Of a stretch of 64,000 nucleotides of DNA, positions 1,205 to 58,182 are shown piece by piece. Numbering within the stretch: position 1 is the first letter of the stretch; every line of letters starts with the position of its first letter. Location of the stretch: positions 1 to 64,000 of IMG/VR virus record IMGVR_UViG_3300009514_000001; one strand, 5' to 3'. The position numbers were made by a program, and so were the translations under genes. The notes under the pieces are model-generated. The model was not told the DNA's origin. It was given only the letters and a program-made list of their open reading frames with translations, and made no database searches.

Positions 1205-1233
1205 GGTCCATTTTAGTTTCTCCGGACGTATTA
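1205..1233 (+). promoter_or_regulatory. Putative phage promoter GGTCC-N18-GTATTA
   Basis: One of nine intergenic or gene-junction copies with exact 18-nt spacing; upstream of ORF 1291. Confidence 0.65.
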
Positions 1234-1290
1234 GGAGGGACATGGCCTCGACCCGTCGGAGGCCGTCAGAACCTGACTAAGGAACTAGCG

Positions 1291-3216
1291 ATGAGTGACG
1301 AAATTCTCCCAGATGTCATCCCGAACGTAGCTCACCTTCGTGATGACGATGATGGCGACAACCTTGCGGTTGGCCAGTGGTACTGGACTGTCGTCAAAGA
1401 CGAGAGGTGGTTGGGATGTTTGGTTCACATCGGTTCGAACTATGTCCAGGTTCAGCGCGTCGGCGTTGAACACTTCACGAGCGTTCGCATCCACCTGGAC
1501 GAGTTCCACAAGCACTGCGTGGAGCCCGAGAACGAGCCCAACGTCTACATCGGCCAGAAGGTCGAAGAGCACCGCCACCAGGTCCAGGGGCTGATGGGCC
1601 GCGTCAAGCAGCTTTGCGCCAAGTTCGGTCTCACCCCGGCTGGTGCACTCCCCGCCGAGTCCAGCCAGACATCGGGCGCACTCGTGGTGGCCCACGGTGT
1701 CTCCGACATCCAGAAGCATCGCTCCGACCTGGTCAAGGCCAAGGAGGAGACCCTCCCGAACCTGTTCAAGGAGATCGAAAAGCACCACCGCCAGATGGCG
1801 AACTGGATGAAGGCCGAACTCGCACCCCTCAAGGCGAACGAGAACGTTCTCAAGGCCCAGACACGTGGCCTGGAGGACCAGATTTTCACCGTCGACCTGT
1901 ACGCTGGCCTCTCGGAGGAGCTGGTCCTCCTCAGAGATGGCAAGCCGGCCCCGGACGAGGAGAAGATTCGCCTCTACCAGCGCCGCCACTACATGGACGA
2001 GGAGTGTCTACTCCAGTACGAGTCCGGGGGGATGGACTTCAGGGGCATCGGGTCCTTCGACCAGTGGCTCATGAAGGATGAGAACCGGGAGCGGATTCTC
2101 CCCAAGCCCCGGTGTATCGTGGCCTTCCGGGTGCGGCGCCACAATAAGGAGCGCGAGGTCCTGTCCCTGTCCGACTTGTCCCTGTCCGACTTCATCACCT
2201 TCCAAGGGTTCGATGAGGCGGACAAGTGGACGTTCCTCTACCTGCGCAACGGGGACCGGTACTTCAGACTCTCAACGACCATCGAGTTCGGTGAGCGCCT
2301 CTTCCCCGACATCGGGCGGTCCAAGCTCCTCGGCGGCGAGGAGCTGTACATCATGCCTGGGTGGACTCGCTCTAGCGAATGCCTCATCACCGAGCGTGAG
2401 CTGATTGCCAAGCGTGAGAAGGAGGCGAAGGAGAGGGCCAAGTACGAGGATAAGCTGGCTGCCTGGAAGAAGGCTGACCCGAAGGCTCGGGGCCTCCGCC
2501 CCCATCTCTGGTTGGGCTCCAGGCCTTCGTCCGAGAGGTACGAACCGCTCAACCAGGACAGCGTCTACTATGATGACGCGATGGCCGAGATTCACAAGGC
2601 CGCCCGGGACCATAATCGCGTCTCTGTCGTTCTCCAAGGTCTCCTTGACCGGTCGACCGCGTTCCAACCACATCCCCCCTGGCGCCTGTGGACAATCGAG
2701 GGGTTCCAGGGAGCTGTCGAGCTTATCTACAACGACTCTCGGGGTCTCGTTGCGGGCGAGAAGCCGGACTTCGAGGCTTTCCGGAAACGGCTCAACGCCA
2801 CACTCAAGAGAGGGTCGAAGACGGTCGGCCAGGAGTACTTCTGGCTGAGGCGGGAGGCGAAGAAGGAGAACGACCGAAGGGGCGACTCGTTTCCCTACAC
2901 CACGTTCCAACCCTATGGAAATCCTGGTCCTGGGGTCGTCGCCGAAGTCAGTGGGATGAGCAGGGACAAGACCAAGGTGAAGTTCACCTGGGAGCGGAAG
3001 AGGTTGAGCTACGGGTACGACCGTAGCCCCATACGCTGCCACCTCGAAGTCCCCATCGACCGCGTCCTGAATGTGGACGCCTACGAGCCGGGGTCTTACC
3101 AGCAATTCTACCGCGACCATAGAACACGCGCGGAGTACCTGAAGTGGGCTCCACTGCTGCTGGCCTGCGAGGACCACTACCAAGAAAAAGCGAAAAAAAG
3201 CGACATGCGTTCATAG
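1291..3216 (+). CDS. Large hypothetical protein (coiled-coil N-terminal half)
   Basis: 641-aa ORF with consistent GC3-rich codon usage; in-frame 15-bp duplication at 2162-2191. Confidence 0.75.
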   Translation: MSDEILPDVIPNVAHLRDDDDGDNLAVGQWYWTVVKDERWLGCLVHIGSNYVQVQRVGVEHFTSVRIHLDEFHKHCVEPENEPNVYIGQKVEEHRHQVQGLMGRVKQLCAKFGLTPAGALPAESSQTSGALVVAHGVSDIQKHRSDLVKAKEETLPNLFKEIEKHHRQMANWMKAELAPLKANENVLKAQTRGLEDQIFTVDLYAGLSEELVLLRDGKPAPDEEKIRLYQRRHYMDEECLLQYESGGMDFRGIGSFDQWLMKDENRERILPKPRCIVAFRVRRHNKEREVLSLSDLSLSDFITFQGFDEADKWTFLYLRNGDRYFRLSTTIEFGERLFPDIGRSKLLGGEELYIMPGWTRSSECLITERELIAKREKEAKERAKYEDKLAAWKKADPKARGLRPHLWLGSRPSSERYEPLNQDSVYYDDAMAEIHKAARDHNRVSVVLQGLLDRSTAFQPHPPWRLWTIEGFQGAVELIYNDSRGLVAGEKPDFEAFRKRLNATLKRGSKTVGQEYFWLRREAKKENDRRGDSFPYTTFQPYGNPGPGVVAEVSGMSRDKTKVKFTWERKRLSYGYDRSPIRCHLEVPIDRVLNVDAYEPGSYQQFYRDHRTRAEYLKWAPLLLACEDHYQEKAKKSDMRS

Positions 3217-3255
3217 TTGGCCTGGTGGGCGGGCTTACTGGAGTGAAGGGCGGCC
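3208..3255 (+). repeat. Conserved upstream element, copy 1 (CGTTCATAGTTGG..GGGCGGGCTTA.TG..TGAAGGG.CGGCC); copy 2 at 7877-7928
   Basis: Two near-identical ~48-nt intergenic blocks, each followed by an ACAACC(C)GAGAGG leader. Confidence 0.7.
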
Positions 3256-3287
3256 AAAGGGGCTGCTCACAACCGAGAGGCAACACC

Positions 3288-3765
3288 ATGACTAACTAAC
3301 GATACTCCCCTAGCAATCCAGTCCCTCCAGCGCGCGTACAACGGCTCCAACGAGGTCCGCTCCGAGCTAGTCATCCTCAACACCACCGGCGATGTCGACC
3401 CGCTCAACTACGGAGGGGGTGTCGTATTCGAGCGGTCCGAGACAGACACCGTCGAGTGGTGGTTCTGGTCCGGATGTGACGAGATGTACGGCGCCCCCGA
3501 CGACGAGCTGGACGCCAAGTTCAAGGTCTACCGACTCACCGTGCCGGACAACGTGCACGAGGAGTACGACTGGGCCGAGTGGAAGAGCATCAGCTCCTTC
3601 ACGGGCGCCGAGGACATCTGCAAGATGGCCGAGAGCAGTGACCTCCAGGAACGCCTCGTCGCTCTGGAGGCAGTCAAGAGCTACCACGGACCCGACGTCT
3701 TGGACTTCTACCCCGTCACGATGACCGGCCGCGAGCTGGCCCGGAAGTTCGGACTTGACAACTAA
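3288..3765 (+). pseudogene. Hypothetical gene broken at codon 4 by a 4-bp duplication (TAAC TAAC)
   Basis: ATG ACT AAC TAA after a strong GAGAGG leader; removing one TAAC joins the ATG to the long frame ending at 3765. Confidence 0.65.
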
Positions 3766-3819
3766 CCCACTGACGAGTGCTGCTGGGGAGCAGCCGAAAC
3801 GCCCCTCGGGGCGTCTGGG
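3766..3819 (+). ncRNA. Type I hammerhead ribozyme
   Basis: CCCA-CUGACGA-G(U)GCUGCU/AGCAGC C-GAAA-CGCCC/GGGCG-UC-UGGG: complete core, three stems, GUC cleavage triplet ending at 3815. Confidence 0.8.
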
Positions 3820-4078: not shown

Positions 4079-4086
4079 GAGATGCA

Positions 4087-4846: not shown

Positions 4847-5164
4847 CCCCCATGAAGATTCGACTGACCTGCCCTCGCCGACGGCGAGGTCTGTGCCGGG
4901 GCTCTCAACTGGGACGAGCCCCAGGAGAGGAAAGATGCTGAGCGAGCCGACGCCTGGATTACCCAAGCGGTCGAGAACCACATTAAGCGCTGCAGCGGAG
5001 CGTACTAGTCAAAGATCTAGGTGGGATGCCGGATCTCGGTGATCGCATCCTACCCGAAGTGTAATGCGCCCTGTGGAGGTGTGGATCGACGAAGAGGGTT
5101 ACTACAGACTATCAATCTACTCCAAGGACACTTCACCCGCGGGGCGTTACCCCGAGAGGACGAC

Positions 5165-5449
5165 ATGAGAGAAGACCTACAGCAGGCAGTTCGAGAGCTT
5201 CACGAAACGGACCCGCGCCGAGAGGCGTGGAACTTGTTCGAGGTGGTCGGCTCGAGCCAGAGACCCAACAAGTTCGAGATCGAAAAGGTCGACCTCCCAG
5301 AAGTCGAGTGCGAGGAGTTTGAGGCCGATGACGACGCGGCCACATACGTGGCCGAGCGCCTCATGGAGGTACACGGCGGGAACAGGTGGGCCGACCATCC
5401 CTCGTGCGCACAGTGTAGGTTGTGCCTCATCCGCGCACTCTACCCATGA
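5165..5449 (+). CDS. Hypothetical protein
   Basis: GAGGA RBS, ATG at 5165, phage-like codon usage. Confidence 0.5.
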   Translation: MREDLQQAVRELHETDPRREAWNLFEVVGSSQRPNKFEIEKVDLPEVECEEFEADDDAATYVAERLMEVHGGNRWADHPSCAQCRLCLIRALYP

Positions 5450-9987: not shown

Positions 9988-10016
9988 GGTCCACTTGGAC
10001 TCCCGAGGACGTACAA
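9988..10016 (+). promoter_or_regulatory. Putative phage promoter GGTCC-N18-GTACAA
   Basis: Exact spacing; divergent intergenic region. Confidence 0.6.
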
Positions 10017-13614: not shown

Positions 13615-14658
13615 ATGAGAAAGCCCTCTGTCGACAAATTCCAAGGATGCCTCATTGGGTGCGCTGTCGGAGATGCCGTCGGCGCTCCCGCGGAAACCTG
13701 GGGACTGCGAGAGTGTCAGACCTACGTCAAGACCAAGGTCGGACCCATGGCCTTTGAGAGGGTGTTCCGGACGTCCAGAAAGGGCGAGCGAGTCCCCTTC
13801 GGACAGTACACCGACGACACCCAGCTCACCCGAGAGCTGATCTCGTCCATCCTCGACCGCGGCGAGGTCGACCCTGAGCACTACGCCGATATCCTCGTGG
13901 ACCTGTTCGGTAACCGCAACCCGGTCGGTACCGGACGAGCCACTAGAGCGGCCGTCACCCGCCTCTATCAGGGAGTCCCCTGGGACGAGGCAGGAACGCC
14001 CTCGCCATCCGCGGGCAACGGCTCGGCCATGAGGGCCGCCCCCGTCGGCCTGCTCCACTGGAACACCAGGCCGAAGCGTATCAAGAACCTGGTCGAGGAC
14101 GCCGAGGCCCAGGGCATCATCACGCATGCCAACCCCGTGTGTACCGCGGGGGCCGTTGCCCTCGCCACTGCCGTCAAACAGGCCCTCTCGCCCGCCCCTC
14201 CGAACACGCTACGCTGGTGGAAGGACCTGGCGGAGGGGGTGTCCTGCGTGGACCACAACGCCTACGACGACGTCCCGATGGACGAACTTATCCTGAGCCT
14301 GTGGAAGCGCCGTGAGGCCAAACCCGAGGACATCAGGACCTGGCTGATGGACATCACCCCAGACTTCGGCACCAAGTGGCGGGGTATCAGCTCCTGGGTT
14401 GTCTCCAGTGTCCTCTGGTCTCTGTACGCATTCCTCCGGACCCCGGACGACTTCTGGATGACCATCCAGACGGCTATCTGGCCGGGAGGAGACGTCGATT
14501 CGACCGCGGCCATGGCAGGGGCCATCAGCGGCGCCTACAACGGCCTGGGAGCCATTCCCGAGGACGTGGCCAGGCAGGTCAACGACGACGGCTCCCAGGG
14601 CTATGAGGAGCTGTGTGAGATGGCCAGCAAACTCCATCAACGAACAGTAGGAGGCTAG
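13615..14658 (+). CDS. ADP-ribosylglycohydrolase (ARH/DraG family)
   Basis: AVGDAVG, YTDDTQ, GNGSAMRAAPVG and GGDVDSTAAMAGAISGA motifs. Confidence 0.92.
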   Translation: MRKPSVDKFQGCLIGCAVGDAVGAPAETWGLRECQTYVKTKVGPMAFERVFRTSRKGERVPFGQYTDDTQLTRELISSILDRGEVDPEHYADILVDLFGNRNPVGTGRATRAAVTRLYQGVPWDEAGTPSPSAGNGSAMRAAPVGLLHWNTRPKRIKNLVEDAEAQGIITHANPVCTAGAVALATAVKQALSPAPPNTLRWWKDLAEGVSCVDHNAYDDVPMDELILSLWKRREAKPEDIRTWLMDITPDFGTKWRGISSWVVSSVLWSLYAFLRTPDDFWMTIQTAIWPGGDVDSTAAMAGAISGAYNGLGAIPEDVARQVNDDGSQGYEELCEMASKLHQRTVGG

Positions 14659-17252: not shown

Positions 17253-17281
17253 GGTCCTGTCCAGGCCCCGGTGCGGTATAC
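17253..17281 (+). promoter_or_regulatory. Putative phage promoter GGTCC-N18-GTATAC
   Basis: Exact spacing; upstream of ORF 17288 and the ligase N-half. Confidence 0.6.
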
Positions 17282-17287: not shown

Positions 17288-17644
17288 ATGGAGCTGAGGG
17301 AGTCCCCAATGGCCTGGAAAGTGGTTTACGATGGACGACGTGGGCAGAGTCTCCACCCGGTTGAGAAGCCGGCGCCCGAGTGCGTCTCGCCCCACTGTGA
17401 CTGCAAGACACAGTGGCCCAAGCCCTCTTGGGACAACCATCTGGGGTTTCGCTACGCCGATCACAGCAACCATTGGGAGGTCCGAGATGCCGCCCTAGCC
17501 CTGGACAACCGGGCTGAACGGGCGGTTCCATCCCTGTGGCTCGCCCACATGGAGGAGATCGGCCGCCCCGTGAGACAGGTCTCTTGGAGAGGGGCCCACG
17601 GCAAAATCCCGAAATTCTACAGAAGAAGAGGACAAGAGCAATGA
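17288..17644 (+). CDS. Hypothetical protein
   Basis: GAGG RBS; ATGA overlap with the ligase N-half. Confidence 0.55.
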   Translation: MELRESPMAWKVVYDGRRGQSLHPVEKPAPECVSPHCDCKTQWPKPSWDNHLGFRYADHSNHWEVRDAALALDNRAERAVPSLWLAHMEEIGRPVRQVSWRGAHGKIPKFYRRRGQEQ

Positions 17645-18756
17645 ACAAGAGCGCGCTCACCAGGAAGATTGAAGATGCCAGAAAGGCCTACTACGGACCT
17701 AACGCCCCTCTCATGACGGATGCCGAGTACGATGCTCTCGAAGACGAGCTTCGCCTCCTCGACCCCGAGCATTACCTGCTCATGACAACAGGGACTCCTC
17801 CTGGCGACAGCGGCTGGGAGAAGGTCTCCCACGGCATCCCGATGCGCTCACTCAACAAGGCCCAGGTCTTCGATGAGATGGGCACCTGGTTCAAGAGCCT
17901 GGGACAGGTCCCCTGCCCACCTCTGGAACCCTCTCTGGTATTGACCGAGAAGCTCGACGGGATCTCATGCTCCCTCCAGTACATCAAGGGCCGACTCGTC
18001 TCGGCCCTGACCCGAGGTGACGGTGCCGTGGGTGAGGATATCACCCGCAACGTCAGTCTGATGAAGGGCGTTCAACACCGGCTGCCGAAAGGACCCTATG
18101 AGAACTGGAGCGGCCACCTCCGAGGTGAGATCGTCTGTCGCCGGTCCGACTTCGAGAAGCACTTCAAGGGCTACTCGAATCCCCGGAACACGGCGAGCGG
18201 GACGGCCAAACGTGAGAGCGACCCGGAGCCCTGCAAACACCTGACGGTCATCGTCTACCAGATGGTTCCCGAGGGCGGCTACATGATTTCGAAGATGACG
18301 GAGCTGGAGACCATCCAGAGCCTCGGGTTCATCGCCCCCAACTACGTTGGCCTGAAGTTCGACCGCATCGAGTCCATCTACCGAGGGTACGTTGACGACC
18401 AACGGGAGCTGTTGGACTACGACATCGACGGCCTGGTCATCGAGGTCAACTCCCAGTCCTTCGCTGAGGACCTCGGCGAGCTGAACAAGAGACCCAAAGG
18501 TGCCGTCGCGTTCAAGTTCCCCCACGACTCCAAAGAGACTACCCTGGAGCGCGTCGAATGGCAGGTCGGCAACACCGGCCGCATCACGCCGGTGGCGGTG
18601 TTCAAGGCGGTCAACCTGGCCGGTGCCAACGTTACCCGGGCAAGTCTCCACAACGTGTCCTACGTCAAGTCACTCAATCTCCACGAGGGCGACAAGATTC
18701 TCGTCAGCCGACGAAATGACGTCATCCCGGCCGTAGAGTCCAACCTCTCAAGGTAA
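17641..18756 (+). CDS. ligA: NAD-dependent DNA ligase, N-terminal half (Ia + adenylation + OB domains)
   Basis: YY..D.EYD.L, EKLDG, RGDG..GEDIT, NPRN.ASG, DIDGLV, WQVG.TGRITPVA and RASLHN; stops right after VIPAV. Confidence 0.93.
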   Translation: MNKSALTRKIEDARKAYYGPNAPLMTDAEYDALEDELRLLDPEHYLLMTTGTPPGDSGWEKVSHGIPMRSLNKAQVFDEMGTWFKSLGQVPCPPLEPSLVLTEKLDGISCSLQYIKGRLVSALTRGDGAVGEDITRNVSLMKGVQHRLPKGPYENWSGHLRGEIVCRRSDFEKHFKGYSNPRNTASGTAKRESDPEPCKHLTVIVYQMVPEGGYMISKMTELETIQSLGFIAPNYVGLKFDRIESIYRGYVDDQRELLDYDIDGLVIEVNSQSFAEDLGELNKRPKGAVAFKFPHDSKETTLERVEWQVGNTGRITPVAVFKAVNLAGANVTRASLHNVSYVKSLNLHEGDKILVSRRNDVIPAVESNLSR

Positions 18757-21399: not shown

Positions 21400-21679
21400 C
21401 GACCCAGTCCTCGCCCTCGCTCCCTTAGTGCCGGTCGACGGGGTTTTGGAGCCGGTGTATGACGCCGTGTTGGTTGACGTTGGGCCCAACCGTTTGGCCA
21501 CCCTCAGGAGGCTCCGCATCGGTCTCTGGCCCGACCTTGGCCTCCTGGAGGTCAAGAGACGGATGGACAAGCTCCCTGTCATCCTGCGGGAGGACATCGA
21601 CCTCTCCGATGCCCAGGACATCAAGAGGGAGTTCTCTCGCTTCGGGGCTCGGGTCGAGATCGTACCTGGGTCCAGTTAG
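21392..21679 (+). CDS. Ribosomal protein bL12 (L7/L12) C-terminal-domain-like protein
   Basis: YDAVLVDVGPNRL...LGLLEVKRRMDKLPVILREDIDLSDAQDIK.EFSRFGARVEI aligns by eye with the bL12 CTD. Confidence 0.65.
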   Translation: MSDDPVLALAPLVPVDGVLEPVYDAVLVDVGPNRLATLRRLRIGLWPDLGLLEVKRRMDKLPVILREDIDLSDAQDIKREFSRFGARVEIVPGSS

Positions 21680-21697
21680 GTGAGCTAGGTCGTATAA
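21669..21697 (+). promoter_or_regulatory. Putative phage promoter GGTCC-N18-GTATAA
   Basis: Exact spacing; upstream of ORF 21729. Confidence 0.65.
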
Positions 21698-21728: not shown

Positions 21729-22127
21729 ATGGCAAGACGACTCAACGACCTATTCAAGCGCGTACAACGACGACGAGGCCCTGGACTCGCTGACCTCAGC
21801 GACCTGAAGAAGCGCCTGGGCATCGAGGAAGCAGAACCCCATGAGGCCCTTCTCAGCTACCCGATGGCGGTAGCCTCTCGCTTTGCCGCGGCGGCCGGAA
21901 CCCTGCGGGACAAGGTCGACACAATGGACCCCTTGGATGGGTTGGTTGAAGTCGGTCGGGCCAAAGCCCTTGCCGGAATCATCCGGTCACAGGAGGGGGA
22001 GGCCAAAGCCGAGGAGATATTGACCATCCTCGGGGTCGATCTGAAGGGTCTCCAGCGGCGCCTGGAGGAACGCCTGGTCGAGGAGATGACCGATCTCGTC
22101 ACCAACTCCCTCTCGGGAGGTGAGTAG
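21729..22127 (+). CDS. Hypothetical protein
   Basis: AGGAG RBS. Confidence 0.55.
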   Translation: MARRLNDLFKRVQRRRGPGLADLSDLKKRLGIEEAEPHEALLSYPMAVASRFAAAAGTLRDKVDTMDPLDGLVEVGRAKALAGIIRSQEGEAKAEEILTILGVDLKGLQRRLEERLVEEMTDLVTNSLSGGE

Positions 22128-24356: not shown

Positions 24357-24385
24357 GGTCCTGAGGAGATTCGGAACCCGTACTA
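24357..24385 (+). promoter_or_regulatory. Putative phage promoter GGTCC-N18-GTACTA
   Basis: Exact spacing; directly upstream of the ligase C-half. Confidence 0.6.
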
Positions 24386-27731: not shown

Positions 27732-27732
27732 G

Positions 27733-27761
27733 GGTCCGGTGTGGGTCCCTCCTCCGTATTA
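27733..27761 (+). promoter_or_regulatory. Putative phage promoter GGTCC-N18-GTATTA
   Basis: Exact spacing; upstream of the NYN gene. Confidence 0.65.
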
Positions 27762-27795
27762 AGAGGAGGAGACCCACACTGGACCCGGAGAGGAG

Positions 27796-31080: not shown

Positions 31081-31082
31081 TT

Positions 31083-32471: not shown

Positions 32472-33197
32472 ATGAACCACCGAACTGGCGATCCCGTCTC
32501 CATCCCCCAGGGCAAGGGTTCTCTGAGGGAAGACCTCGTGCGCCGCCTGAATAACGTTGCCCTGGACATCGAGATGTACAGGGAGGGCTTAGACATCGAC
32601 GAACACGTCGCCCTCGACTTTGCCCAACGCTGCGACGTGATTTGTGGTCTTCTCAAGAGGGACAAGGAACCACCATCACCCTTCGCCCAGTTTGTTGACC
32701 CGGCCCTCTTCTGGGCGGCGGTAGCGCAAGGATGGAGTCTTCAGACCAAGGTCGACAATCTCCTCCACGTCGTTGTTCTCGGTCCGACTGGGGTCCCGTA
32801 CGTTCGTACCGACGACTTCGACTCGCCTTTCTTGGCTAAACCGAAAATGTCCTCCCAGTACCCGATCATCGGCATCTGGGTCGTCCGCGACGTGAACGGA
32901 GTTGAGGGGAGTCCCTATTGGGACGAGTTCGCCGGCAACAGCGAGTATACCGTCGTTCGACTGGTCGACGGTGGTGTTGGCATCGTCAGCACCGACTATG
33001 AACGATCCGGTCCCGGGAGACACCGCGTACGGAGGTATTTCAAGGACGAAAAGAGGGGTGAATCCGTCGAGGGCCCACTGAACGCCACCGCCTCGACCAC
33101 CTGGCGCACCTACGAGAATGGCCAAGGAGATGCCTACGGGAGACTCCTCAAGAAGGCCAAGGCCCGGGTGAGGTGTCCGGGGCATGAGATCGCCTAG
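32472..33197 (+). CDS. Hypothetical protein
   Basis: 241-aa ORF. Confidence 0.55.
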   Translation: MNHRTGDPVSIPQGKGSLREDLVRRLNNVALDIEMYREGLDIDEHVALDFAQRCDVICGLLKRDKEPPSPFAQFVDPALFWAAVAQGWSLQTKVDNLLHVVVLGPTGVPYVRTDDFDSPFLAKPKMSSQYPIIGIWVVRDVNGVEGSPYWDEFAGNSEYTVVRLVDGGVGIVSTDYERSGPGRHRVRRYFKDEKRGESVEGPLNATASTTWRTYENGQGDAYGRLLKKAKARVRCPGHEIA

Positions 33198-33225
33198 GTC
33201 CACTTCGGTCCCTCCGGCCGTATAA
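33197..33225 (+). promoter_or_regulatory. Putative phage promoter GGTCC-N18-GTATAA
   Basis: Exact spacing; upstream of the PARP-like gene. Confidence 0.65.
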
Positions 33226-37936: not shown

Positions 37937-37965
37937 GGTCCACTTTCGGACCCGGTGTCGTATGG
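37937..37965 (+). promoter_or_regulatory. Putative phage promoter GGTCC-N18-GTATGG in front of the cas operon
   Basis: Exact spacing, 23 nt before the GTG start at 37988. Confidence 0.6.
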
Positions 37966-39985: not shown

Positions 39986-40079
39986 CGAGAGTCAGAGAAA
40001 GCCCTTGCCTTTCCGACCACGGGAACACCCGGGGAACTATTAACAACACAATGTGGTTGAGGCGAAAATTGAGGCGAAA

Positions 40080-40754
40080 ATGAACCTGAGAAAACTACTC
40101 AGCGACCCTGTGAGGGTCAAGGTCACAGGCAGAAGAGGCCTCTTTTCGCGCCATGACTTTCCTACGGAGAGGATTTCATACCCTATCATGACCCCCAGTG
40201 CCGCCCGGGGGCTGCTCAGAAGGATATACGGAAAACCTCAGCATTTCTGGGTGATACAGGCGGTTCAGGTGCTGAATCCAATTCGGTTCGAGAACATCAC
40301 CTACAACGAGGTGAGACTCCCGAAGAGACCTGTTCCTGTGAATGTTAGCAATACATCTCAGGTCCGTATTCAGAGGTCTGCCCAGGTTCTCATAGAGCCC
40401 TCCTACATCATCGAGGCACGGGTTCTGGTGCATCCCTATGCGTACAGGAACGGAGGCATGCCCACCAAGCACACGGAACAGCTCAAGAGACGTCTGAAGA
40501 GGGGCCAGTTCTTCCTCCAACCCGATCTCGGCAAGAGCGAGTTTTTCGCTGATTGTTCTTTGCCGGACGGCAGCGAGAGTCCCCTTCCAGTGAGCCAGGA
40601 CCTCGGCCGTATCCCTCTCTTCGTCGATCAGAGCGAAGGGCGCTCGCACTACTTCCAGGCCTTCATGAAGCGGGGTGTGGTGCAGGTGCCGCAGAAGCAG
40701 CTTCTGGACGTCCTGGAGCCGAAACTCCTCGACCAAGACCCTTGGAGAACGTGA
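40080..40754 (+). CDS. cas5: Type I-C Cas5 (Cas5d, crRNA-processing)
   Basis: ERISYPIMTPSAARG.L..IYGKP..W.I..V.VLNPIRF..I..NEV; TKH..Q..RR..RGQ.F.QP.LG..EF. Confidence 0.92.
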   Translation: MNLRKLLSDPVRVKVTGRRGLFSRHDFPTERISYPIMTPSAARGLLRRIYGKPQHFWVIQAVQVLNPIRFENITYNEVRLPKRPVPVNVSNTSQVRIQRSAQVLIEPSYIIEARVLVHPYAYRNGGMPTKHTEQLKRRLKRGQFFLQPDLGKSEFFADCSLPDGSESPLPVSQDLGRIPLFVDQSEGRSHYFQAFMKRGVVQVPQKQLLDVLEPKLLDQDPWRT

Positions 40755-42655
40755 TGTACAATCTCATCCGAGAACTCACCAAAGTACGGGTGCCCTCGAC
40801 GTTCCCGGGCCCTGGGTATCTCCTCAGAACTGCCAACGTGTTCTGTCACCTAGACAGATCGGGATTCTCTCACTGGGAGGTCAAGAAAGAGGGTGAGCTT
40901 TACATGCTCCCCGACTCTGGACGTACAGGGACGGGTACAAAGGTCGGCCTGTGGGGTGACCAGGTGAGGGTCTACACCGGGAACAAGGAGACCAAGAAGG
41001 CCCGGGCCAAGAGAGAGGCCGCGAACAAGGCGAAGGGGAGAGACAACTCCAACGACTTGGCGGTTGCAATGGCCAAAGCTGTGAGCGAGGCCCACAATCG
41101 CATCAAGGGCCGCGCCGGAGAGGACACCAGGCTGAGTCTCGTCTACACATTTCTCACGGACGAGAGTCAGCGTCAGCGGGCTTACGATGCCCTTCCGGAT
41201 GACGTGAACCCGAACAGTCCTGTCGTCCTTGTTGTCGAGGGGAGGACGATGGTCCGTCCCCAGGAAGGTCCCTGGGCATCTCCGAACATCGACCTCTACG
41301 AGGAAGAGGGCAAACGCATTGCCTGGGTAGGCAATCTCAAGACCGTCGAGGGGGTGTGTAGCGTCACAGGCGAAAAGGACCTCATCCCCGACATCCACCC
41401 TGGGTCCGTGAAGATTGGTGACTCCAGAGCCCAGCTACTTTCCGGAAACATCCCCCAACACTTCCCCAATCCCAAAGGCAAGCTGTGGAGCACTGGCATC
41501 GGCCTGGAGGCTGCCCAGCAGTACACGACCGCCCTTGACTACCTGACGACGGACAAGAACCACCACCTGACGGCCCTCCACACCACGACCAAGAACCCCT
41601 CCTCCAGCGACTTCCAGAAGATAGTCTGGTGGGGCCGGGACGAGGACGCCTCCCTTCCTATCTACCAGAGCATTATCCGCCCCTCTGCGGAAGTCCGCAC
41701 GGCTATCGAGGAAGCCCTTGAGGGGAGGGGAGGTCCGGTCAACCTCGAACACCCCTTCAACACACTCGTCCTAGGTACCCACGTCAGACGCCTGGTGGTG
41801 CTCAGCATGTCGAGCGATACCCTCCTGGGTGTCTACCAGAGTGCCAGTCGATGGCTGAGAATGACCGAGACTCTCAGCGTTGATGAAAGGGGCGCCCTTG
41901 CCCGGAAAAACCACTCTCTCAAGGCCCTGTCGAGGGCCCTTCTGCCCCGCTCAAAGGAGGGTGAGTGGTTCGGTAAGTGCTCTCCCTACACGACGCAGGA
42001 CATCCTGAGGTCCATGCTCTTTCGGGAGCCCCTCACCAAGAGGCTCATCCACGGCCTGATGACTCGTCTCGAACGTGACCAACAGCTAACCACCGCCCGC
42101 ACAGCCCTCTTGCAGGTCTACCTACACCAACGAGGAATCATGGCTGACAAGACCCAAGCCCGAACCCCCATCGACCCGGAACTGGGAGGGTACGTCGGAT
42201 ACAATCTCGGACGTCTCCTCCAAGAGGCGACGGCCATCCAAAAGGCGGCAATCCGAGTCAATCGGGACTTGAGTTCCACCCTCTCATCCTACGCCAAGAA
42301 CCACCCCCGACGGCTGTACGACAAAACCACTCAGAAGGCGGACAATCACTTGACCTCTCTCAGGACCAAAGGGGACTACGGACTGGCCTCAATGTTCGAG
42401 AAGCGCCTGGGGGCCATCATCGGACGCATCTCTATGGTGCCGAAACAACTTCCCGAGGAGCAACTCGCACTGTTTCGCAAGGGACTGCGGGATCAGTATC
42501 TGGCCTCCCAGGCCGCCAACAAAAGACGATCTCAACTTAACAACGAGGACATCGCCAAGGACGAACTCGCATACCAGAAAGCGCAGGTCGACCTGACTCT
42601 AGGTCTCATTGACCCGGAGGACTGCCCTGCACCACCCACCACCGACAAGGAGTGA
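40754..42655 (+). CDS. cas8c: Type I-C Cas8c large subunit
   Basis: CSVTGEK...HP, AAQQYTTALDYL and C-terminal GYNLGRL..Q..A; TGATG coupling to cas5. Confidence 0.82.
   Translation: MYNLIRELTKVRVPSTFPGPGYLLRTANVFCHLDRSGFSHWEVKKEGELYMLPDSGRTGTGTKVGLWGDQVRVYTGNKETKKARAKREAANKAKGRDNSNDLAVAMAKAVSEAHNRIKGRAGEDTRLSLVYTFLTDESQRQRAYDALPDDVNPNSPVVLVVEGRTMVRPQEGPWASPNIDLYEEEGKRIAWVGNLKTVEGVCSVTGEKDLIPDIHPGSVKIGDSRAQLLSGNIPQHFPNPKGKLWSTGIGLEAAQQYTTALDYLTTDKNHHLTALHTTTKNPSSSDFQKIVWWGRDEDASLPIYQSIIRPSAEVRTAIEEALEGRGGPVNLEHPFNTLVLGTHVRRLVVLSMSSDTLLGVYQSASRWLRMTETLSVDERGALARKNHSLKALSRALLPRSKEGEWFGKCSPYTTQDILRSMLFREPLTKRLIHGLMTRLERDQQLTTARTALLQVYLHQRGIMADKTQARTPIDPELGGYVGYNLGRLLQEATAIQKAAIRVNRDLSSTLSSYAKNHPRRLYDKTTQKADNHLTSLRTKGDYGLASMFEKRLGAIIGRISMVPKQLPEEQLALFRKGLRDQYLASQAANKRRSQLNNEDIAKDELAYQKAQVDLTLGLIDPEDCPAPPTTDKE
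42140..42655 (+). CDS. cas11: Cas11c small subunit from an internal in-frame start in cas8c
   Basis: GAGG-AATC-ATG in frame, just before the Y.LGRL C-terminal domain. Confidence 0.6.
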   Translation: MADKTQARTPIDPELGGYVGYNLGRLLQEATAIQKAAIRVNRDLSSTLSSYAKNHPRRLYDKTTQKADNHLTSLRTKGDYGLASMFEKRLGAIIGRISMVPKQLPEEQLALFRKGLRDQYLASQAANKRRSQLNNEDIAKDELAYQKAQVDLTLGLIDPEDCPAPPTTDKE

Positions 42656-42659
42656 AAGA

Positions 42660-43613
42660 ATGGACGTCAAGTGTATCAACCCAAAGACCCGCCACGATTT
42701 GCTAATCACCTTCAGCGTCACCCGAGGCAACCCCAACGGAGATCCGGATGCCGGAGGAGCGCCCCGAGAAACCCAGGATGGCTATGGCATCGTCACCGGT
42801 GAGAGCATCAAGCGCTTGGTACGGGATGCCGCGGAAGAGGTCTTCGAACAGAAGATTTACATCCGGTCCGGACCGCCCCTAGAGGAGGCTCTGTTGAAGG
42901 CCGTCGAGCGAGCCTACAACGGAGACTCCTCCGAAGCTCCCCGTGACAAGAAAGGCAACCTCCTGGTGGCCCAGGTACCAAAGGACAAAATCCAGGCCAT
43001 CCTCGACGAACTGAGATCGTACTTCGACAACCGCATGTTCGGAGCCGTTTTCGCCAGTCAGAAAGTCCCTGTCGGACGATTCCGAGGACCCGTAGCTATC
43101 GGAGATGCCCGGTCCTTCGATGAGATCGTAGTCCGAGAAAATCGCCTCACTCGGGTCGTCTCCGCCAAGTCCGATGAGGGCAAGGACCGAACCGGCCAGG
43201 GCACCTTCGCGGAGCGCTACGCCGTCGACTTCGGCTTCTACGAAAGCTTCGGCAGCTTCAGCCCCCACGGCTCTGGCAAGCACGTCTCCGAGGAGGACCT
43301 CAAGGTGCTCTTCCAGTCTCTCGTCACGGGGTTCCAAGAAAGCGCCTCCGCCCGTCGTGGGGGCTCCTACCAGGTTCACCGCATCTACGTGTTCACGCAC
43401 GACAACGCCCTGGGTAACGCCTCCCAGCACGATCTCCGCAAAGTCGTCAAGGTGACCAAGCGGAAAGACGTGGATAGTCCCCTCTCCCTCGACGACTACC
43501 TCGTCGAAGTGAACCGAGGTGCCATCCCCAAAGGAGTTCACCTGAGCATCATCGACAACAGCAACGTCCTGGACCCGCAGGCCTGGTACGTCGACAGCTC
43601 CCGTCCTCGATAG
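42660..43613 (+). CDS. cas7: Type I-C Cas7 (Csd2)
   Basis: GNPNGDPDAGG.PR, G.VT.ESIKR.VRD, FDNRMFGAVF, RGPV and HDNALGNA. Confidence 0.95.
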   Translation: MDVKCINPKTRHDLLITFSVTRGNPNGDPDAGGAPRETQDGYGIVTGESIKRLVRDAAEEVFEQKIYIRSGPPLEEALLKAVERAYNGDSSEAPRDKKGNLLVAQVPKDKIQAILDELRSYFDNRMFGAVFASQKVPVGRFRGPVAIGDARSFDEIVVRENRLTRVVSAKSDEGKDRTGQGTFAERYAVDFGFYESFGSFSPHGSGKHVSEEDLKVLFQSLVTGFQESASARRGGSYQVHRIYVFTHDNALGNASQHDLRKVVKVTKRKDVDSPLSLDDYLVEVNRGAIPKGVHLSIIDNSNVLDPQAWYVDSSRPR

Positions 43614-43789
43614 TACCCGTTCGAACACCCCAGTGATGAGGAGACCCCTAGGGGTGCTCGAACGATAATGAAATCAATAGGTTGGATGCACTTTTGAGAG
43701 CCTCCCATCTTGTTCTTTGATAAGTGAATTAGGGGTGCTCGAAAACAGTACTCCAACTACCTAAGAACACTAGCTTTTGGGCTAGTGCG
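43614..43789 (+). promoter_or_regulatory. CRISPR leader
   Basis: AT-richer region with CGTTCGAACACCCC/GGGGTGCTCGAACG inverted repeat and a second AGGGGTGCTCGAA. Confidence 0.7.
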
Positions 43790-45473
43790 GTCGTCTTCTC
43801 GAAAGAGGAGACGGGAGATTTCAACGTGAGAAAGCTGAGGAGGTTCTGGAAGCATGGAGCGTCGTCTTCTCGAAAGAGGAGACGGGAGATTTCAACGAGG
43901 TGGGCGTAGACTCCGGGGGACTCGCCTTCAGTCGTCTTCTCGAAAGAGGAGACGGGAGATTTCAACGAGTTCGATGGGGACCGGCTTAAAGGAATCCTGA
44001 GCAGGTCGTCTTCTCGAAAGAGGAGACGGGAGATTTCAACGCCGAGAAGTACCCGGTGTAGTCGTAGCCATGGAACAGTCGTCTTCTCGAAAGAGGAGAC
44101 GGGAGATTTCAACGAGTGTGTAGTGGGCTGCCCCGCTACGGATTACGGGTCGTCTTCTCGAAAGAGGAGACGGGAGATTTCAACGATGATGCCTGCGGTG
44201 ATGTAGGGGCCGTCTTTCCGGGTCGTCTTCTCGAAAGAGGAGACGGGAGATTTCAACCTAGGATAGGGAAACGGGTTCAGCCGAAGACGCACGTCGTCTT
44301 CTCGAAAGAGGAGACGGGAGATTTCAACGTTGAAGAGAAGACCAGGAGAGACAGAGAGGCCACGTCGTCTTCTCGAAAGAGGAGACGGGAGATTTCAACA
44401 ACGTCGACACCAGTCTCTTCTCGCCCTTCTTGAGAGGTCGTCTTCTCGAAAGAGGAGACGGGAGATTTCAACTGATTCTGTCGGACACGACTGTCCTCGA
44501 CGCACTGAGTCGTCTTCTCGAAAGAGGAGACGGGAGATTTCAACGTCTTCAGGAGAGCTGGAGCCGACCCCACCCGACCCCACCTGAGCCCGTCGTCTTC
44601 TCGAAAGAGGAGACGGGAGATTTCAACATGGTCAGGGTCTCGACGGGGAGGTGATACGAGGGCGGTCGTCTTCTCGAAAGAGGAGACGGGAGATTTCAAC
44701 CCGAAGAGATCGTCGGAGGCGAATCCGCCACCCACGAGTCGTCTTCTCGAAAGAGGAAGATTTCAACTATCCGAGGTTAGAACAGGACAGTGAAGGTGTC
44801 GCCTGAGAGCTGAACTCGTGTCGTCTTCTCGAAAGAGGAGACGGGAGATTTCAACAGGGCCTGGCTACCCCCAGGAGACTTCTGGGCGGGCGTCGTCTTC
44901 TCGAAAGAGGAGACGGGAGATTTCAACTCACTCTCGTGGTCCACATCCAACCTCGGGGCTCCTGTCGTCTTCTCGAAAGAGGAGACGGGAGATTTCAACG
45001 ATGAAGAGCCGAAGCCGCGCCAGCGCCCGAGAAGCGCGTCGTCTTCTCGAAAGAGGAGACGGGAGATTTCAACGGAGGGACAGCGTGTTTCTTCTTCGGC
45101 TTGGCTTCCTGTCGTCTTCTCGAAAGAGGAGACGGGAGATTTCAACCGGAGCAGATGCTACGCAGGGCGGAGACTGCCCGCGGTCGTCTTCTCGAAAGAG
45201 GAGACGGGAGATTTCAACGGACTACGAGCGCCGCTATCCTGGCACCACGCACCCCGTCGTCTTCTCGAAAGAGGAGACGGGAGATTTCAACAGGTGCGGT
45301 CGTCTTCTCGAAAGAGGAGACGGGAGATTTCAACAAAGACAGGGACACGGTCGTTCACACCTGGTGTCGTCTTCTCGAAAGAGGAGACGGGAGATTTCAA
45401 CGGCAATGTCGCCCGCTGTTAGCCCCCAGCGCAGCCAGTCGTCTTCTCGAAAGAGGAGACGGGAGATCCGGGG
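43790..45473 (+). CRISPR. Type I-C array: 24 repeats GTCGTCTTCTCGAAAGAGGAGACGGGAGATTTCAAC (36 bp), 23 spacers, mostly 34-38 bp
   Basis: Counted by hand; 9-bp stem with GAAA loop and a G-U pair supports the + strand; the last repeat (45438) is degenerate. Confidence 0.97.
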
Positions 45474-48378: not shown

Positions 48379-49580
48379 ATGGACAGGCTGCACCACTACG
48401 GACGAGATGACTCCGGGGCTCTCTACGAGCTGGCGGTAATCTCTCGTCGTAGGGGTGACCGGGCGCCTTGGGGCGTCGCTGTCAGCCGTCTCGTCGTTCT
48501 TGAGCAGTGGAATCTGCTCGCCGATGCCTTTTTGGGGAGTCCACTTCCCTGGCTCCGGTCGTATTATCCAGTAACAGGGCGCTGTGCCTCCTCATGGAAA
48601 GTGGCAGCACGGTGCCTCCGGGCCCTAGAAGGCCCGGACTGGTGGCTCTGGCTCCAACAGCATTCACTGGACTCTTGCGTCGCCGGTATCCTACATGGCG
48701 ACGACCGGGACCTCAGCGAGGCTGTCAGGGCCGACTGGAACCGGCTTCTTGCCGAAGGCGTCAGCCAAAGGATTCTCGCCAAGGGCAAGAGAGGACCGGT
48801 TCTCTGGGTTCGAGTCCCAGTTCCTTCACTGGACACGAGGATGCGATGAAACACGTTCTGCCCGAAGACACGACCGAGAAAGAGTTCCCCCGCCAGTTGG
48901 CCGCCATCCTGGCGAAAGCCTCGGACGGTGACGAGATCGAGCTGCCGACCAATGAGCTGTGCCAGGTGGCCGCCGAGACCCTCAGGGAGGACTACCCCAA
49001 CAAGCAGAATATCCGCCTGATCAGCCAAGAACCAATTCCCGTGTTCCAAGCCCCGGGCGGCGGACCCATGGTGCTCATCGGACCACCGCCGTGGCTCCAG
49101 GGAGAGGGAGACAACGACACTCCCCTGGCCGGCTCACCTCTCAGAGACTACGACGCCTGGATTCAAAAGCTCCAGGAGGACGGCCGGGTCCCAAGCGAAG
49201 AGGACGTCCAGGAGTGGCGGGAAAGGGAGGCGAGCATCCGAGGCCACGAGACCTGGATGGCCGGCTGGTTCGACAGCATGATTCACGGGTTCATCATGGC
49301 GGGCAGGGAGGAAGGGACCAACGAGTTCCTCGACCGAACCCGCGTCCTTGTCCACCAGAGCGCCCTCGTTGTAGGACACCTGATGGAACTGGCTCGCCAG
49401 GCTGCCAACCGGGAGGAAGGAAAGGGACCCGAAGTCCTTCAGGAGCTTCGGGACCTGATGCGCGACGGTATCCGTTCGGGCATCTCGGACACCTCCAACT
49501 GCCAGTGCCCGAGCTGCGTTCAGCGACGCGAGGAAGAAGCCCGCGCCGCCGAAGCCGCTCTGGATGAGGATGGGGATTGA
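48379..49580 (+). CDS. Two hypothetical ORFs (48379-48849, 48846-49580)
   Basis: ATGA coupling. Confidence 0.55.
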
Positions 49581-56747: not shown

Positions 56748-56751
56748 GGCC

Positions 56752-57705
56752 TTAGTCCACGGCAAGGTAGTAGTGGAAGTTAATACCCAGGTCGCTCATG
56801 ACCTTGGTGACGTCGCGGAACGACATCTTGGGGATGTCGGACTCGTTCTGGCGGGCCCACTCGTAGAACTTCTTGGTGCCCGTCCGCTTGCGCTTGCGGG
56901 GGATGGCCGTCGGCTCGTTGATCTTGTCGGTCAGGTCCCTGACCATGAAGCTCTGCGGTTCGGCAACGACCCTGACCTTGGGGCCGGAGACGTCGACAGG
57001 GTCCATCCCTACCGGGTCGATGCGAATGCCCTTGTGAGTGCGTTCGTCGAGCATCAGGCGGTAGCTGAGGCCCAGGACTGACTTGGCCATGCGAAGGGCC
57101 TTCGTGTAGTCCGCCGAGTAGAGAGAGGAGGACACGTAGTCCAGGAGAGCCTTGCCGAGGCCATCCAGGTACGTCTGGGACCCCAAGCTGAACTGGTCGA
57201 CCTTCTTCCCCCGCTTGCCGGCGTAGGTGAGGTCCCAGACCTTCACCCAGTCCGCGAGACGCTGAACGCGGATGCGACCGTTCTCGAACTTCTCCCCGAC
57301 GGCCAGGGGCTTCCCGGTCGCCCGCTGGACCTTCTTGATGAGTTCGGGGTGCCACTGGCCCTGGTCCCGTGTTCCATACTCCAGCTTCCGAAGCTCTCGG
57401 TACTTCTCGAACTCACGGTCGAGACTGCGAGCTTGTCTAAGGATGGGCAGAAGACGATCTCGAAGCTCCGGCTTGGCGTGAGCCAGACGGACCACCTCGT
57501 CGAAGAGGGCGGCCTCCTTGTCCGGCTGCGGATGGATGTCGCGCTTGTCGAAGTCCTCGCGCTCAACACGCTCCTCTCCATCCTTGTCGAGGTCAGCGAC
57601 CTGAGACGCCCGACGACCCAACCAGCTTCCTCTGGCCTCCTTGGTTGGGCCGCTGACCATCTGGTTCACGACTCGGCGAGCAATCTCCCTGGCGTCCATA
57701 TTCAT
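56752..57705 (-). CDS. Hypothetical protein, possibly virion-associated (IARRVV and VRLAHAKPELRDRLLPIL motifs)
   Basis: GGAG RBS; shared motifs. Confidence 0.6.
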   Translation of the reverse strand: MNMDAREIARRVVNQMVSGPTKEARGSWLGRRASQVADLDKDGEERVEREDFDKRDIHPQPDKEAALFDEVVRLAHAKPELRDRLLPILRQARSLDREFEKYRELRKLEYGTRDQGQWHPELIKKVQRATGKPLAVGEKFENGRIRVQRLADWVKVWDLTYAGKRGKKVDQFSLGSQTYLDGLGKALLDYVSSSLYSADYTKALRMAKSVLGLSYRLMLDERTHKGIRIDPVGMDPVDVSGPKVRVVAEPQSFMVRDLTDKINEPTAIPRKRKRTGTKKFYEWARQNESDIPKMSFRDVTKVMSDLGINFHYYLAVD

Positions 57706-57760
57706 CTCCCAATTGGTCCGCACTGGCTGTCCAATACTCCGGTTGTATAGGAGGCATATC

Positions 57761-57860
57761 ATGCCAGCAGATTCCACATTTGAACAACGACGCATCGCCC
57801 GCCGAGTGGCGGACGCCTACTTCAGAGCCCATCCCGCTGCGCCACGTGACAACAGGGCCA
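57761..57860 (+). pseudogene. N-terminus of an IARRVA-motif gene truncated by the IS remnant
   Basis: GGAGG RBS; MPADSTFEQRRIARRVADAYF runs into tnpB-derived sequence. Confidence 0.5.
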
Positions 57861-58154
57861 TGCTCAGGAGTCAAGGTTATCGAAGCGGACCGATGGTTTC
57901 CCAGCTCGAAGACGTGTTCTGGGTGCGGGGAAGTAAAGTCTGACTTGAGTTTGTCGGACCGGACGTACGAATGTTCGGGGTGCGGTCTCAAACTAGATCG
58001 AGACCTGAACGCCGCAATCAATTTGAAGCAGTTGGCCGGGAGTTCGGCGGTATCAGCCTGTGGAGAGGACGTAAGACCATCAGGAGAGCTTGCTCACCTG
58101 ATGGCGACCTCGATGAAGCAGGAACCGGACAGAGGAAAAAGTTCTGGAGAACGG
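57860..58154 (+). mobile_element. tnpB: IS607 remnant: 3' end of tnpB plus the right end/omega-RNA region
   Basis: GVKVIEADRWFPSSKTCSGCG..DRDLNAAINL; ends GGAGAACGG like the element ending at 32370. Confidence 0.85.
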
Positions 58155-58182
58155 GTCCAGTTGACTCCTCGCGGTCGTATAT
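58154..58182 (+). promoter_or_regulatory. Putative phage promoter GGTCC-N18-GTATAT overlapping the IS right end
   Basis: Exact spacing; the first G is the last base of the IS end. Confidence 0.6.

What the first reader, a model, noticed from the sequence alone, without database searches (positions are those of the whole stretch)
1205..58182. GGTCC-N18-GTA(T/C) promoter motif repeated nine times with invariant spacing
Seen: GGTCC at 1205, 9988, 17253, 21669, 24357, 27733, 33197, 37937 and 58154, each followed after exactly 18 nt by GTATTA, GTACAA, GTATAC, GTATAA, GTACTA, GTATTA, GTATAA, GTATGG and GTATAT. All are on the + strand just upstream of gene or operon starts, including both ligase halves, the PARP-like gene and the cas operon. 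This bipartite layout resembles ECF-type sigma promoters but not sigma70 TTGACA/TATAAT. Inference: a regulon read by a phage-encoded sigma factor or RNA polymerase, or by a hijacked host ECF sigma.
Basis: partly seen in the sequence, partly recalled or inferred. Interest (0 to 1): 0.72.

Follow-up and report, generated by a model that had tools for sequence, protein, structure and literature searches.

The report
Huge-phage promoter motif, ECF-sigma style
The repeated GGTCC-N18-GTAT signal is real and is almost certainly the promoter of the early and middle genes of an uncultured huge phage; related phages use the same two-box layout with other letters and encode their own ECF-like sigma factor, though no such gene was found in this record.

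Summary
All nine sites are at the stated coordinates on the + strand, against 1.08 expected by chance. The window is the first 64 kb of a 222-kb viral record. That record holds 12 exact sites and one near-site. All are intergenic and point at the next gene; 10 of the 12 exact sites end 25-60 nt before a start codon. They occur only at spacing 18 and only in the non-structural 1-99 kb.

The wider consensus is gGGTCCAnTT-N13-CGTAT. A close relative keeps both boxes while the spacer has diverged. A distant 60% GC phage fragment has five more sites.

Relatives of 200-620 kb share the split ligase and PARP gene order. They carry the same layout, a 5-mer, 18 nt, then GTA, with other letters: GGCTT..GAGTAGTCT, GGATC..GAGTAG, GACTT..CGTAGAT. 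One complete 436-kb relative has 54 strict copies.

Those relatives encode a 300-330 aa sigma-70-family protein of ECF type. In two of them it sits behind a TTGACA-N17-TAGGAA promoter. ECF sigma-H and sigma-E promoters (GGAAT-N18-19-GTT) have the same geometry.

No sigma or RNA polymerase gene was found in this record, which may be incomplete. No transcript data could be obtained. Best reading: a promoter class read by host core polymerase with a phage-clade ECF-like sigma.

The parts
1205..1231 (+). Promoter-like site GGTCC-N18-GTAT, 60 nt before the ATG of a 641-aa ORF (1291-3216) with no family match
9988..10014 (+). Site GGTCC-N18-GTAC in a divergent gap. The next sizeable gene starts at 10379 (phrog_6452), so there is a leader of about 365 nt or a tiny ORF
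17253..17279 (+). Site in a divergent gap before the LigA N-half (adenylation and OB domains; 17641-18756, or from GTG 17536)
21669..21695 (+). Site 34 nt before a run of genes 21729-24011, which includes a CYTH-like and a RecA-like protein
24357..24383 (+). Site 30 nt before the LigA C-half (HhH and BRCT). Both boxes are identical in relative L218 while the spacer differs
27733..27759 (+). Site 40 nt before a NYN-domain gene. It is embedded in the inverted repeat 27732-27747 / 27771-27786
33197..33223 (+). Site 43 nt before the PARP/WGR gene 33266-35011
37937..37963 (+). Site 25 nt before a 665-aa ORF, followed by cas8c (40754), cas7 (42660) and a 24-repeat CRISPR array (43790-45470)
48538..48564 (+). 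Near-site AGTCC-N18-GTAT (one mismatch), intergenic, about 280 nt before gene 48846-49580
58154..58180 (+). Site in a divergent gap, 38 nt before a 246-aa ORF (58218-58958) that has a homologue in the 436-kb relative

Best explanation
The GGTCC-N18-GTAT sites are the promoters of the early and middle (non-structural) genes of an uncultured huge phage. They form a two-box promoter. The -35-like box is gGGTCCAnTT and the -10-like box is CGTAT(A), held exactly 18 nt apart (5-mer to GTA). Transcription would start a few bases after the second box, giving leaders of about 20-50 nt that carry the ribosome-binding site. The layout is one lineage's version of a promoter grammar shared by a clade of 200-620 kb phages: a 5-mer, N18, then GTA. 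In the relatives the likely reader is the host core RNA polymerase carrying a phage-encoded ECF-like (sigma-24-type) sigma factor, made first from an ordinary host-type promoter. Shown here: the motif, its statistics, its placement, its conservation, the variants in other lineages, and the sigma-like family in relatives. Inferred: that the sites fire as promoters, where transcription starts, that the sigma family reads them, and that this phage has such a sigma. If it does, the gene lies on DNA missing from the record or is too divergent to recognise.
For: Statistics and placement: 9 hits against 1.08 expected. There are 12 of 12 sites intergenic and co-oriented in the full record, only at spacing 18. 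Extra conserved positions lie outside the search pattern. It is the only enriched dyad upstream of genes. No site lies in the structural half, 100-222 kb.
Footprinting: relative L218 (88% identical LigA C-half) keeps GGTCCTGAG and CGTACTAGA, with a diverged spacer of equal length.
Second phage: G001 is 60% GC and shares few proteins with this phage. It has five intergenic, co-oriented sites with the same consensus.
Clade-wide layout with other letters: G[GT]CTTAyyT..GAGTAGTCTAGG in G509; GGATCATC..GAGTAG in L223, L229, L238 and L257; GACTTACTT..CGTAGAT in G518; GGGTAAC..GAGTAG in G517. In G509 a looser form of its motif gives 73 hits at N18 against 2-19 at other spacings. The strict form gives 54 sites, of which 45 are intergenic and 51 co-oriented, with a median of 21 nt to the start codon.
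Sigma: weak Sigma70_r2 hits in 300-330 aa ORFs of relatives define a family with region-2-like and region-4-like blocks. It is present in all three relatives that are at least 90% complete. Its best solved relative by sequence is sigma-H 3mzy, E 1.5e-5. Its fold matches are nearly all ECF sigmas. JGI names some members sigma-24. TTGACA-N17-TAGGAA precedes the sigma gene in G509 and G538.
Geometry: it matches the ECF sigma-H/sigma-E promoters GGAAT-N18-19-GTT and GGAAC-N17-18-cGTT (PMC10012870).
Against: No sigma region 2, no convincing region 4 and no member of the relatives' sigma family was found in this 222-kb record or in G001, even with relaxed thresholds and a 12-member profile.
Several relatives that do encode the sigma showed no clear motif in the roughly 20 kb I held, so the sigma-to-motif link rests on co-occurrence in a few genomes.
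The -35 box lacks the AAC that is typical of ECF promoters.
No transcript ends are available.
If these are the very first genes expressed, a phage sigma made after infection could not read them.
Confidence: 0.55

Rival explanations
1. The sites are promoters, but they are read by a host sigma factor (an ECF-type or other alternative sigma already in the cell), not by a phage protein.
For: No sigma or polymerase gene was found in this record or in G001. G000 and G001 share the motif and the 60% GC content but few proteins, as two phages of one host might. The geometry is that of cellular ECF promoters. The sites precede what look like the earliest genes, which need a reader present at infection.
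Against: Related phages of 46-64% GC keep the same N18-GTA layout while changing the box letters. That is easier to explain by a factor carried by the phages. Those relatives encode an ECF-like sigma. Five bacterial genomes tested showed no excess of the motif over the reversed control, but the host is unknown, so this is weak.
Confidence: 0.2
2. The sites are promoters for an unrecognised phage-encoded, perhaps virion-delivered, RNA polymerase or other novel factor hidden among the unannotated proteins, for example the 3789-aa and 3604-aa ORFs.
For: Most proteins of this phage match nothing. The two giant ORFs have no Pfam or PHROG hit. A reader delivered with the DNA would explain early expression without a host-type promoter. 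Canonical sigma-70 sites are not enriched.
Against: No T7-like, beta or beta-prime polymerase domain was found. No convincing catalytic DxDGD-type motif was found. The two short boxes with a variable spacer are typical of sigma-dependent promoters, not of the contiguous promoters of single-subunit polymerases. Relatives with the same layout have a sigma.
Confidence: 0.12
3. The motif is not a promoter but another strand-specific intergenic signal, such as an operator for a regulator that binds GGTC-like repeats, or an RNA-level processing or termination element.
For: Several sites carry further GGTC(C) copies about 10 and 20 nt downstream, or short inverted repeats. Site 27733 lies inside a 16-nt-arm inverted repeat that is also present, with other letters, in L218.
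Against: The extra repeats and hairpins are not shared by all sites. The sites sit at the head of gene runs, including divergent gaps where no upstream transcript would exist. In G509 many sites are arranged back to back in divergent gaps, as promoters are.
Confidence: 0.05

Closest known systems
ECF (group 4) sigma promoters of the sigma-H / sigma-E / sigma-R type (GGAAT-N18-19-GTT, GGAAC-N17-18-cGTT; PMC10012870)
   Same: Two short boxes. The first is a 5-mer starting with GG. The gap is about 18 nt. The second box has a (c)GT core. There are few sites per genome, each directly before a gene.
   Different: The -35 letters are GGTCC here (GGCTT, GGATC, GACTT in relatives), not GGAAC/T. The -10 box is GTA, not GTT. 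The spacing is invariant at 18. The sites are in a phage. No cognate sigma was found in this record.
Phage-encoded sigma cascades. From my own knowledge: SPO1 gp28 and gp33/34, T4 gp55, phiEco32 gp36. From papers read here: sigma factors of 'group 2' jumbo phages (PMC7824862) and sigma-70 genes in huge phages (PMC7162821).
   Same: In the relatives a host-type promoter precedes a phage sigma gene, and many phage genes carry a private promoter, so the host core polymerase is redirected.
   Different: The sigma family here is ECF-like with an extra N-terminal domain of about 130 aa. Its promoter layout and its per-lineage letter changes were not described in the papers I searched. In this record the sigma itself is missing.
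T7-like, N4-like and phiKZ-like phage polymerase promoters
   Same: A private, highly repeated promoter that marks phage genes.
   Different: No such polymerase was detected. The motif is split into two boxes with a variable spacer rather than one contiguous block. Hairpins are not a shared feature.

Membership tests
ECF-sigma-dependent promoter class | Two conserved boxes at a fixed distance of about 16-19 nt | tested here: met
   12 of 12 sites at N18; other spacings are at background level
ECF-sigma-dependent promoter class | -10 box with a (C)GT core | tested here: met
   CGTA in 11 of 12 sites; compare cGTT in PMC10012870
ECF-sigma-dependent promoter class | -35 box containing AAC (GGAAC-like) | tested here: not met
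   The box is GGTCC(A); only the leading GG and the T-rich tail resemble GGAACTT
ECF-sigma-dependent promoter class | A cognate two-domain (sigma-2 plus sigma-4) sigma in the same genome | tested here: not met
   None in the 222-kb record. Present in relatives G509, G514, G517, G518, G538 and others. The record may be incomplete.
ECF-sigma-dependent promoter class | Transcription start about 5-8 nt after the -10 box | not testable with these tools
   No sequencing run was listed for this DNA
Housekeeping sigma-70 promoters (TTGACA-N17-TATAAT) | TTGACA-like -35 box and TAnnnT -10 box | tested here: not met
   The position matching the last T of the -10 box is never T. Consensus sites are not enriched: 4 against 3.1 in 1-20 kb, and one perfect TTGACA site in the whole record.
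Single-subunit (T7-like or N4-like) phage polymerase promoters | A phage polymerase gene and a contiguous promoter of about 20 nt, or a hairpin promoter | tested here: not met
   No PF00940 hit, although that search also found nothing in the control genomes. The spacer is variable. Hairpins occur at some sites only.
phiKZ-like multisubunit phage polymerase system | Beta-like and beta-prime-like genes | tested here: not met
   No Rpb2_6 or Rpb1_2 hit at E <= 1, with the controls positive
Sigma-70 family, ECF-like (the relatives' 300-330 aa protein) | Region 2 and region 4 folds and sequence similarity to known sigmas | tested here: met
   Pfam Sigma70_r2 down to E 1.4e-6. PDB profile hit to sigma-H 3mzy, E 1.5e-5, spanning both regions. 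The Foldseek list is dominated by ECF sigmas, best probability 0.97, though E-values are weak and model pLDDT is 70.

The most novel reading that the evidence does not exclude
A large clade of uncultured 200-620 kb phages uses a private promoter grammar: a 5-mer, exactly 18 nt, then GTA. Its box letters drift between lineages together with a phage ECF-like sigma that carries a new N-terminal domain. The lineage of this window keeps the grammar but has lost or replaced the recognisable sigma, so a new kind of reader may be at work, either a very divergent sigma or a virion-delivered factor.
Probability: 0.35. Interest if true: 0.7.

Novelty: new variant of a known kind. Interest (0 to 1): 0.6.

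Why it matters
It gives a usable transcription map for a phage whose proteins mostly match nothing. About 13 start points organise the ligase, PARP, NYN, CRISPR-Cas and helicase genes into units.

Across the clade it offers a natural series of matched sigma and promoter variants (GGTCC, GGCTT, GGATC, GACTT; GTAT, GTAG). These could be tested as orthogonal expression parts, and could show how ECF-type sigmas change specificity.

The motif is also a cheap marker for recognising fragments of these phages in metagenomes. That is how G001 was found.

Tried and rejected
RNA or DNA sequencing runs holding this DNA: none was listed in two attempts, so no transcript starts could be read.

Host identification:
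- TnpB relatives in genomes reach 48% identity at most and are scattered over Actinomycetota, Chloroflexota and Pseudomonadota.
- GlnII is 50-55% identical in both Actinomycetota and Chloroflexota.
- No tRNA genes.
The host remains unknown.

Motif excess in five bacterial genomes: none.

Link to GGWCC restriction-modification: GGTCC is not avoided in the genome (507 observed against 582 expected), so this was rejected.

Sigma candidates in this record:
- The weak Sigma70_r4_2 hit is a LAGLIDADG/HNH-type homing endonuclease.
- The 340-aa orphan behind the only TTGACA promoter shows no likeness to the sigma family or to any known fold.
- Proteins shared with G001 are a RecA-like protein, a DNA methylase and an SNF2 helicase, not transcription factors.

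A polymerase catalytic-motif search gave nothing convincing. Relatives of the 641-aa first gene: none in IMG/VR. GenBank phages reach only about 30% identity. G003, a 46% GC relative, has no site. A literature search for GGTCC-type sigma promoters found nothing relevant.

My generic 5-mer/N18/GTA statistic is weak. It did not rank GGTCC first on the whole genome, and it found no clear variant in eight sigma-bearing relatives from the roughly 20 kb held for each.
Full report
OBSERVATION. The pattern GGTCC-N18-GTAY occurs nine times in the window, at exactly the coordinates given. All nine are on the + strand, and shuffles give 1.08.

The window is bases 1-64000 of a 222,005-bp IMG/VR virus record. 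The record is 60% GC, has a 96-bp terminal repeat, and CheckV rates it 42% complete. The whole record has 12 exact hits. The three extra ones are on the minus strand at 65079, 80308 and 98858, where the genes also run on the minus strand. There is none between 100 and 222 kb.

Other spacings from 14 to 22 give 0-4 hits, with 9 at spacing 21. With a rough gene caller of my own (about 89% coding), all 12 sites are intergenic and point at the next gene. Ten of them end 25-60 nt before a start codon that has a Shine-Dalgarno sequence. The other two, 9988 and 17253, have leaders of about 360 nt or only small ORFs.

Bases that were not part of the search pattern are conserved too. This gives gGGTCCAnTT-N13-CGTAT(A). 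A weight matrix adds one site with a single mismatch at 48538. An unbiased count of all 4-mer/gap/4-mer dyads in upstream regions returns this motif and nothing else.

WHAT LIES BEHIND THE SITES. The genes that follow the sites are:
- a 641-aa orphan;
- a phrog_6452 protein;
- the two halves of a split NAD-dependent DNA ligase;
- a run of genes that includes CYTH-like and RecA-like proteins;
- a NYN-domain protein;
- a PARP/WGR protein;
- a 665-aa orphan followed by type I-C cas8c and cas7 and a 24-repeat CRISPR array;
- further orphans;
- on the minus strand, a protein with a peptidoglycan-binding domain.

The half of the genome without sites, 100-222 kb, is a long minus-strand block of very large genes and tail-fibre-like genes. 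The motif thus marks the non-structural, early or middle part of the genome.

CONSERVATION. Scanning IMG/VR with a stricter form of the motif found one other contig with several hits. This is G001, an 86.6-kb fragment, also 60% GC. It has five well-formed sites, intergenic and on the gene strand. It shares only a handful of proteins with this phage.

A much closer relative is L218, whose ligase C-half is 88% identical. Before the ligase C-half it keeps GGTCCTGAG and CGTACTAGA, while the 18-nt spacer and the upstream DNA have diverged. It also keeps both boxes before the NYN gene. That is the footprint expected of two protein-contacted boxes held at a fixed distance.

A CLADE-WIDE GRAMMAR. Searching with the ligase C-half found many contigs of 200-620 kb that share the split ligase and PARP gene order. 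They do not carry GGTCC..GTAT. Several of them do carry their own repeated intergenic motif with the same geometry, a 5-mer, 18 nt, then GTA:
- G509/L220 (436 kb, complete, 62% GC): G[GT]CTTAyyT..aGAGTAGTCTAGG;
- L223, L229, L238 and L257: GGATCATC..GAGTAG;
- G518 (536 kb): GACTTACTT..CGTAGAT;
- G517: GGGTAAC..GAGTAG.

In G509 a looser form of its motif gives 73 hits at N18 against 2-19 at other spacings. The strict form gives 54 sites, of which 45 are intergenic and 51 point at the next gene. The median distance to the start codon is 21 nt, and many sites are arranged back to back in divergent gaps. The window's motif is therefore one lineage's version of a shared promoter layout.

THE LIKELY READER IN THE RELATIVES. 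This record has no Sigma70_r2 hit and no T7-like, beta or beta-prime polymerase domain. Its only weak region-4 hit is a homing endonuclease.

Across 31 relatives' records, the Sigma70_r2 model gave weak hits in ORFs of 300-330 aa. These form a family with three parts. There is an N-terminal domain of about 130 aa (ARTEHGGHxV..YPSARK..TFDRYFR). There is a region-2-like block (GYDPEDVLQEVYKGLLVRNxGKCPFDPxKSSFGHYVH..NYRRR). There is a C-terminal region-4-like helix-turn-helix.

A profile of the family finds it in 12 of the 31 relatives' records, including all three that are at least 90% complete. Its best solved relative by sequence is sigma-H 3mzy (E 1.5e-5, both regions). An AlphaFold model (pLDDT 70) gives a Foldseek list made almost entirely of ECF sigmas: M. 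tuberculosis sigma-H and sigma-L, E. coli sigma-E, CnrH, AlgU. The E-values are weak, as expected for two domains on a flexible linker.

The family has more than 800 members in the large protein collection, and JGI names some of them sigma-24. In G509 and G538 the gene is preceded by TTGACA-N17-TAGGAA, an ordinary host-type promoter. That fits a cascade: host sigma, then phage sigma, then phage promoters.

Cellular ECF sigma-H/sigma-E promoters are GGAAT-N18-19-GTT and GGAAC-N17-18-cGTT (PMC10012870). That is the same geometry as GGnnn-N18-(c)GTA.

THE GAP IN THE ARGUMENT. Neither this record nor G001 holds a detectable member of that family, even with a 12-member profile and all filters off. 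The record may be incomplete, for four reasons:
- CheckV rates it 42% complete.
- Its 64-222 kb part is collinear with G509 270-435 kb, while most of G509 1-145 kb has no counterpart in it.
- G001, which has the same motif, is collinear with G509 3-81 kb, the part missing here.
- The 96-bp 'terminal repeat' of this record recurs inside G001 at 95% identity. This is what one would see if the contig were one arc between two copies of a repeat.

Against this, the sigma gene of G509 (159 kb) lies between segments that do have counterparts in the window. Its absence here is therefore not simply explained by the missing arc.

In addition, eight sigma-bearing relatives showed no clear motif in the roughly 20 kb I held of each. 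No RNA data exist to place transcription starts. The host is unknown.

VERDICT. That these sites are promoters I hold at about 0.85. That they are read by host core polymerase with a phage-clade ECF-like sigma I hold at about 0.55. A host sigma is at about 0.2, an unrecognised phage polymerase or factor at about 0.12, and a non-promoter element at about 0.05.

Phage sigmas and ECF-type promoters are both known, and huge and jumbo phages are known to encode sigmas (PMC7162821, PMC7824862). The layout shared by these phages, its letter changes between lineages and the N-terminally extended sigma family were not described in the papers I searched. I rate the finding a new variant of a known kind and of moderate to good interest.

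Noticed in passing
window 1-96 (identical to genome 221910-222005); G001 69619-69714: The 96-bp terminal repeat of the record recurs inside the otherwise dissimilar phage fragment G001 at 94.8% identity. With CheckV at 42% and the gene-order comparison with G509, the 222-kb record may be one arc of a larger genome rather than a complete one. The fold of the 96-mer is unremarkable (z = -1.4).
   Followed up: partly
window 37988-45470: A phage-borne type I-C-like module: a 665-aa orphan, a likely cas5, cas8c (40754-42655), cas7 (42660-43613) and a 24-repeat CRISPR array (43790-45470; repeat GTCGTCTTCTCGAAAGAGGAGACGGGAGATTTCAAC). I recognised no nuclease or adaptation genes among those scanned.
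   Followed up: partly
window 30358-32346; genome 219034-220293: An IS607-type element (serine-recombinase TnpA plus TnpB) in a lower-GC patch that my codon-based gene caller skipped. There is a second TnpB copy near the right end of the genome.
   Followed up: partly
window 27732-27786; L218 about 5123-5170: The promoter-like site before the NYN gene lies inside an inverted repeat with 16-nt arms centred on the GTATTAA box. The close relative has an inverted repeat at the same place with different letters, which hints at a conserved hairpin (a terminator overlap or a regulatory element).
   Followed up: partly
window 17641-18756 and 24413-25252: The NAD-dependent DNA ligase is split into two genes about 5.6 kb apart. 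The split is conserved across many 200-620 kb phage contigs. In relatives, inteins, HNH or TnsA-like genes sit between or beside the halves.
   Followed up: partly
genome 105854-117223 and 145369-156183 (outside the window): ORFs of 3789 and 3604 aa with no Pfam or PHROG match at all. The 3604-aa one is conserved in the 436-kb relative (36% identity over its full length).
   Followed up: partly
genome 179836-179863, minus strand (outside the window): The only perfect TTGACA-N16-TAnnnT site in the record. It is intergenic, 21 nt before an 88-aa gene and a 340-aa orphan, and is a candidate host-type early promoter. The 340-aa protein has one known homologue and no recognisable fold.
   Followed up: yes
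G001 40069-40671; G509 31419-32012: A conserved 200-aa protein with a clear Sigma70 region 4 domain (E 2e-11) followed by a second helix-turn-helix, but with no region 2. It is a possible transcription regulator of the clade and was not found in this record.
   Followed up: partly
upstream regions across the whole genome, e.g. window 26090s, 46810s, 51370s: TA(A/T)GGT is mildly enriched upstream of genes (16 forward against 5 reverse; top among words of equal composition). It might be a -10-like element of a second promoter class. The signal is weak.
   Followed up: partly
window 13615-14658, 26558-27688, 33266-35011: The phage carries an ADP-ribosylglycohydrolase, a GlnII-type glutamine synthetase and a PARP/WGR protein. 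These suggest ADP-ribosylation-based host takeover or counter-defence.
   Followed up: no
window 60562-60720: A tandem repeat of three units of about 54-66 nt in a 1.1-kb stretch where I called no gene.
   Followed up: no
genome 93503-96544 (outside the window): An SNF2-family helicase interrupted by an intein with a LAGLIDADG endonuclease domain.
   Followed up: no
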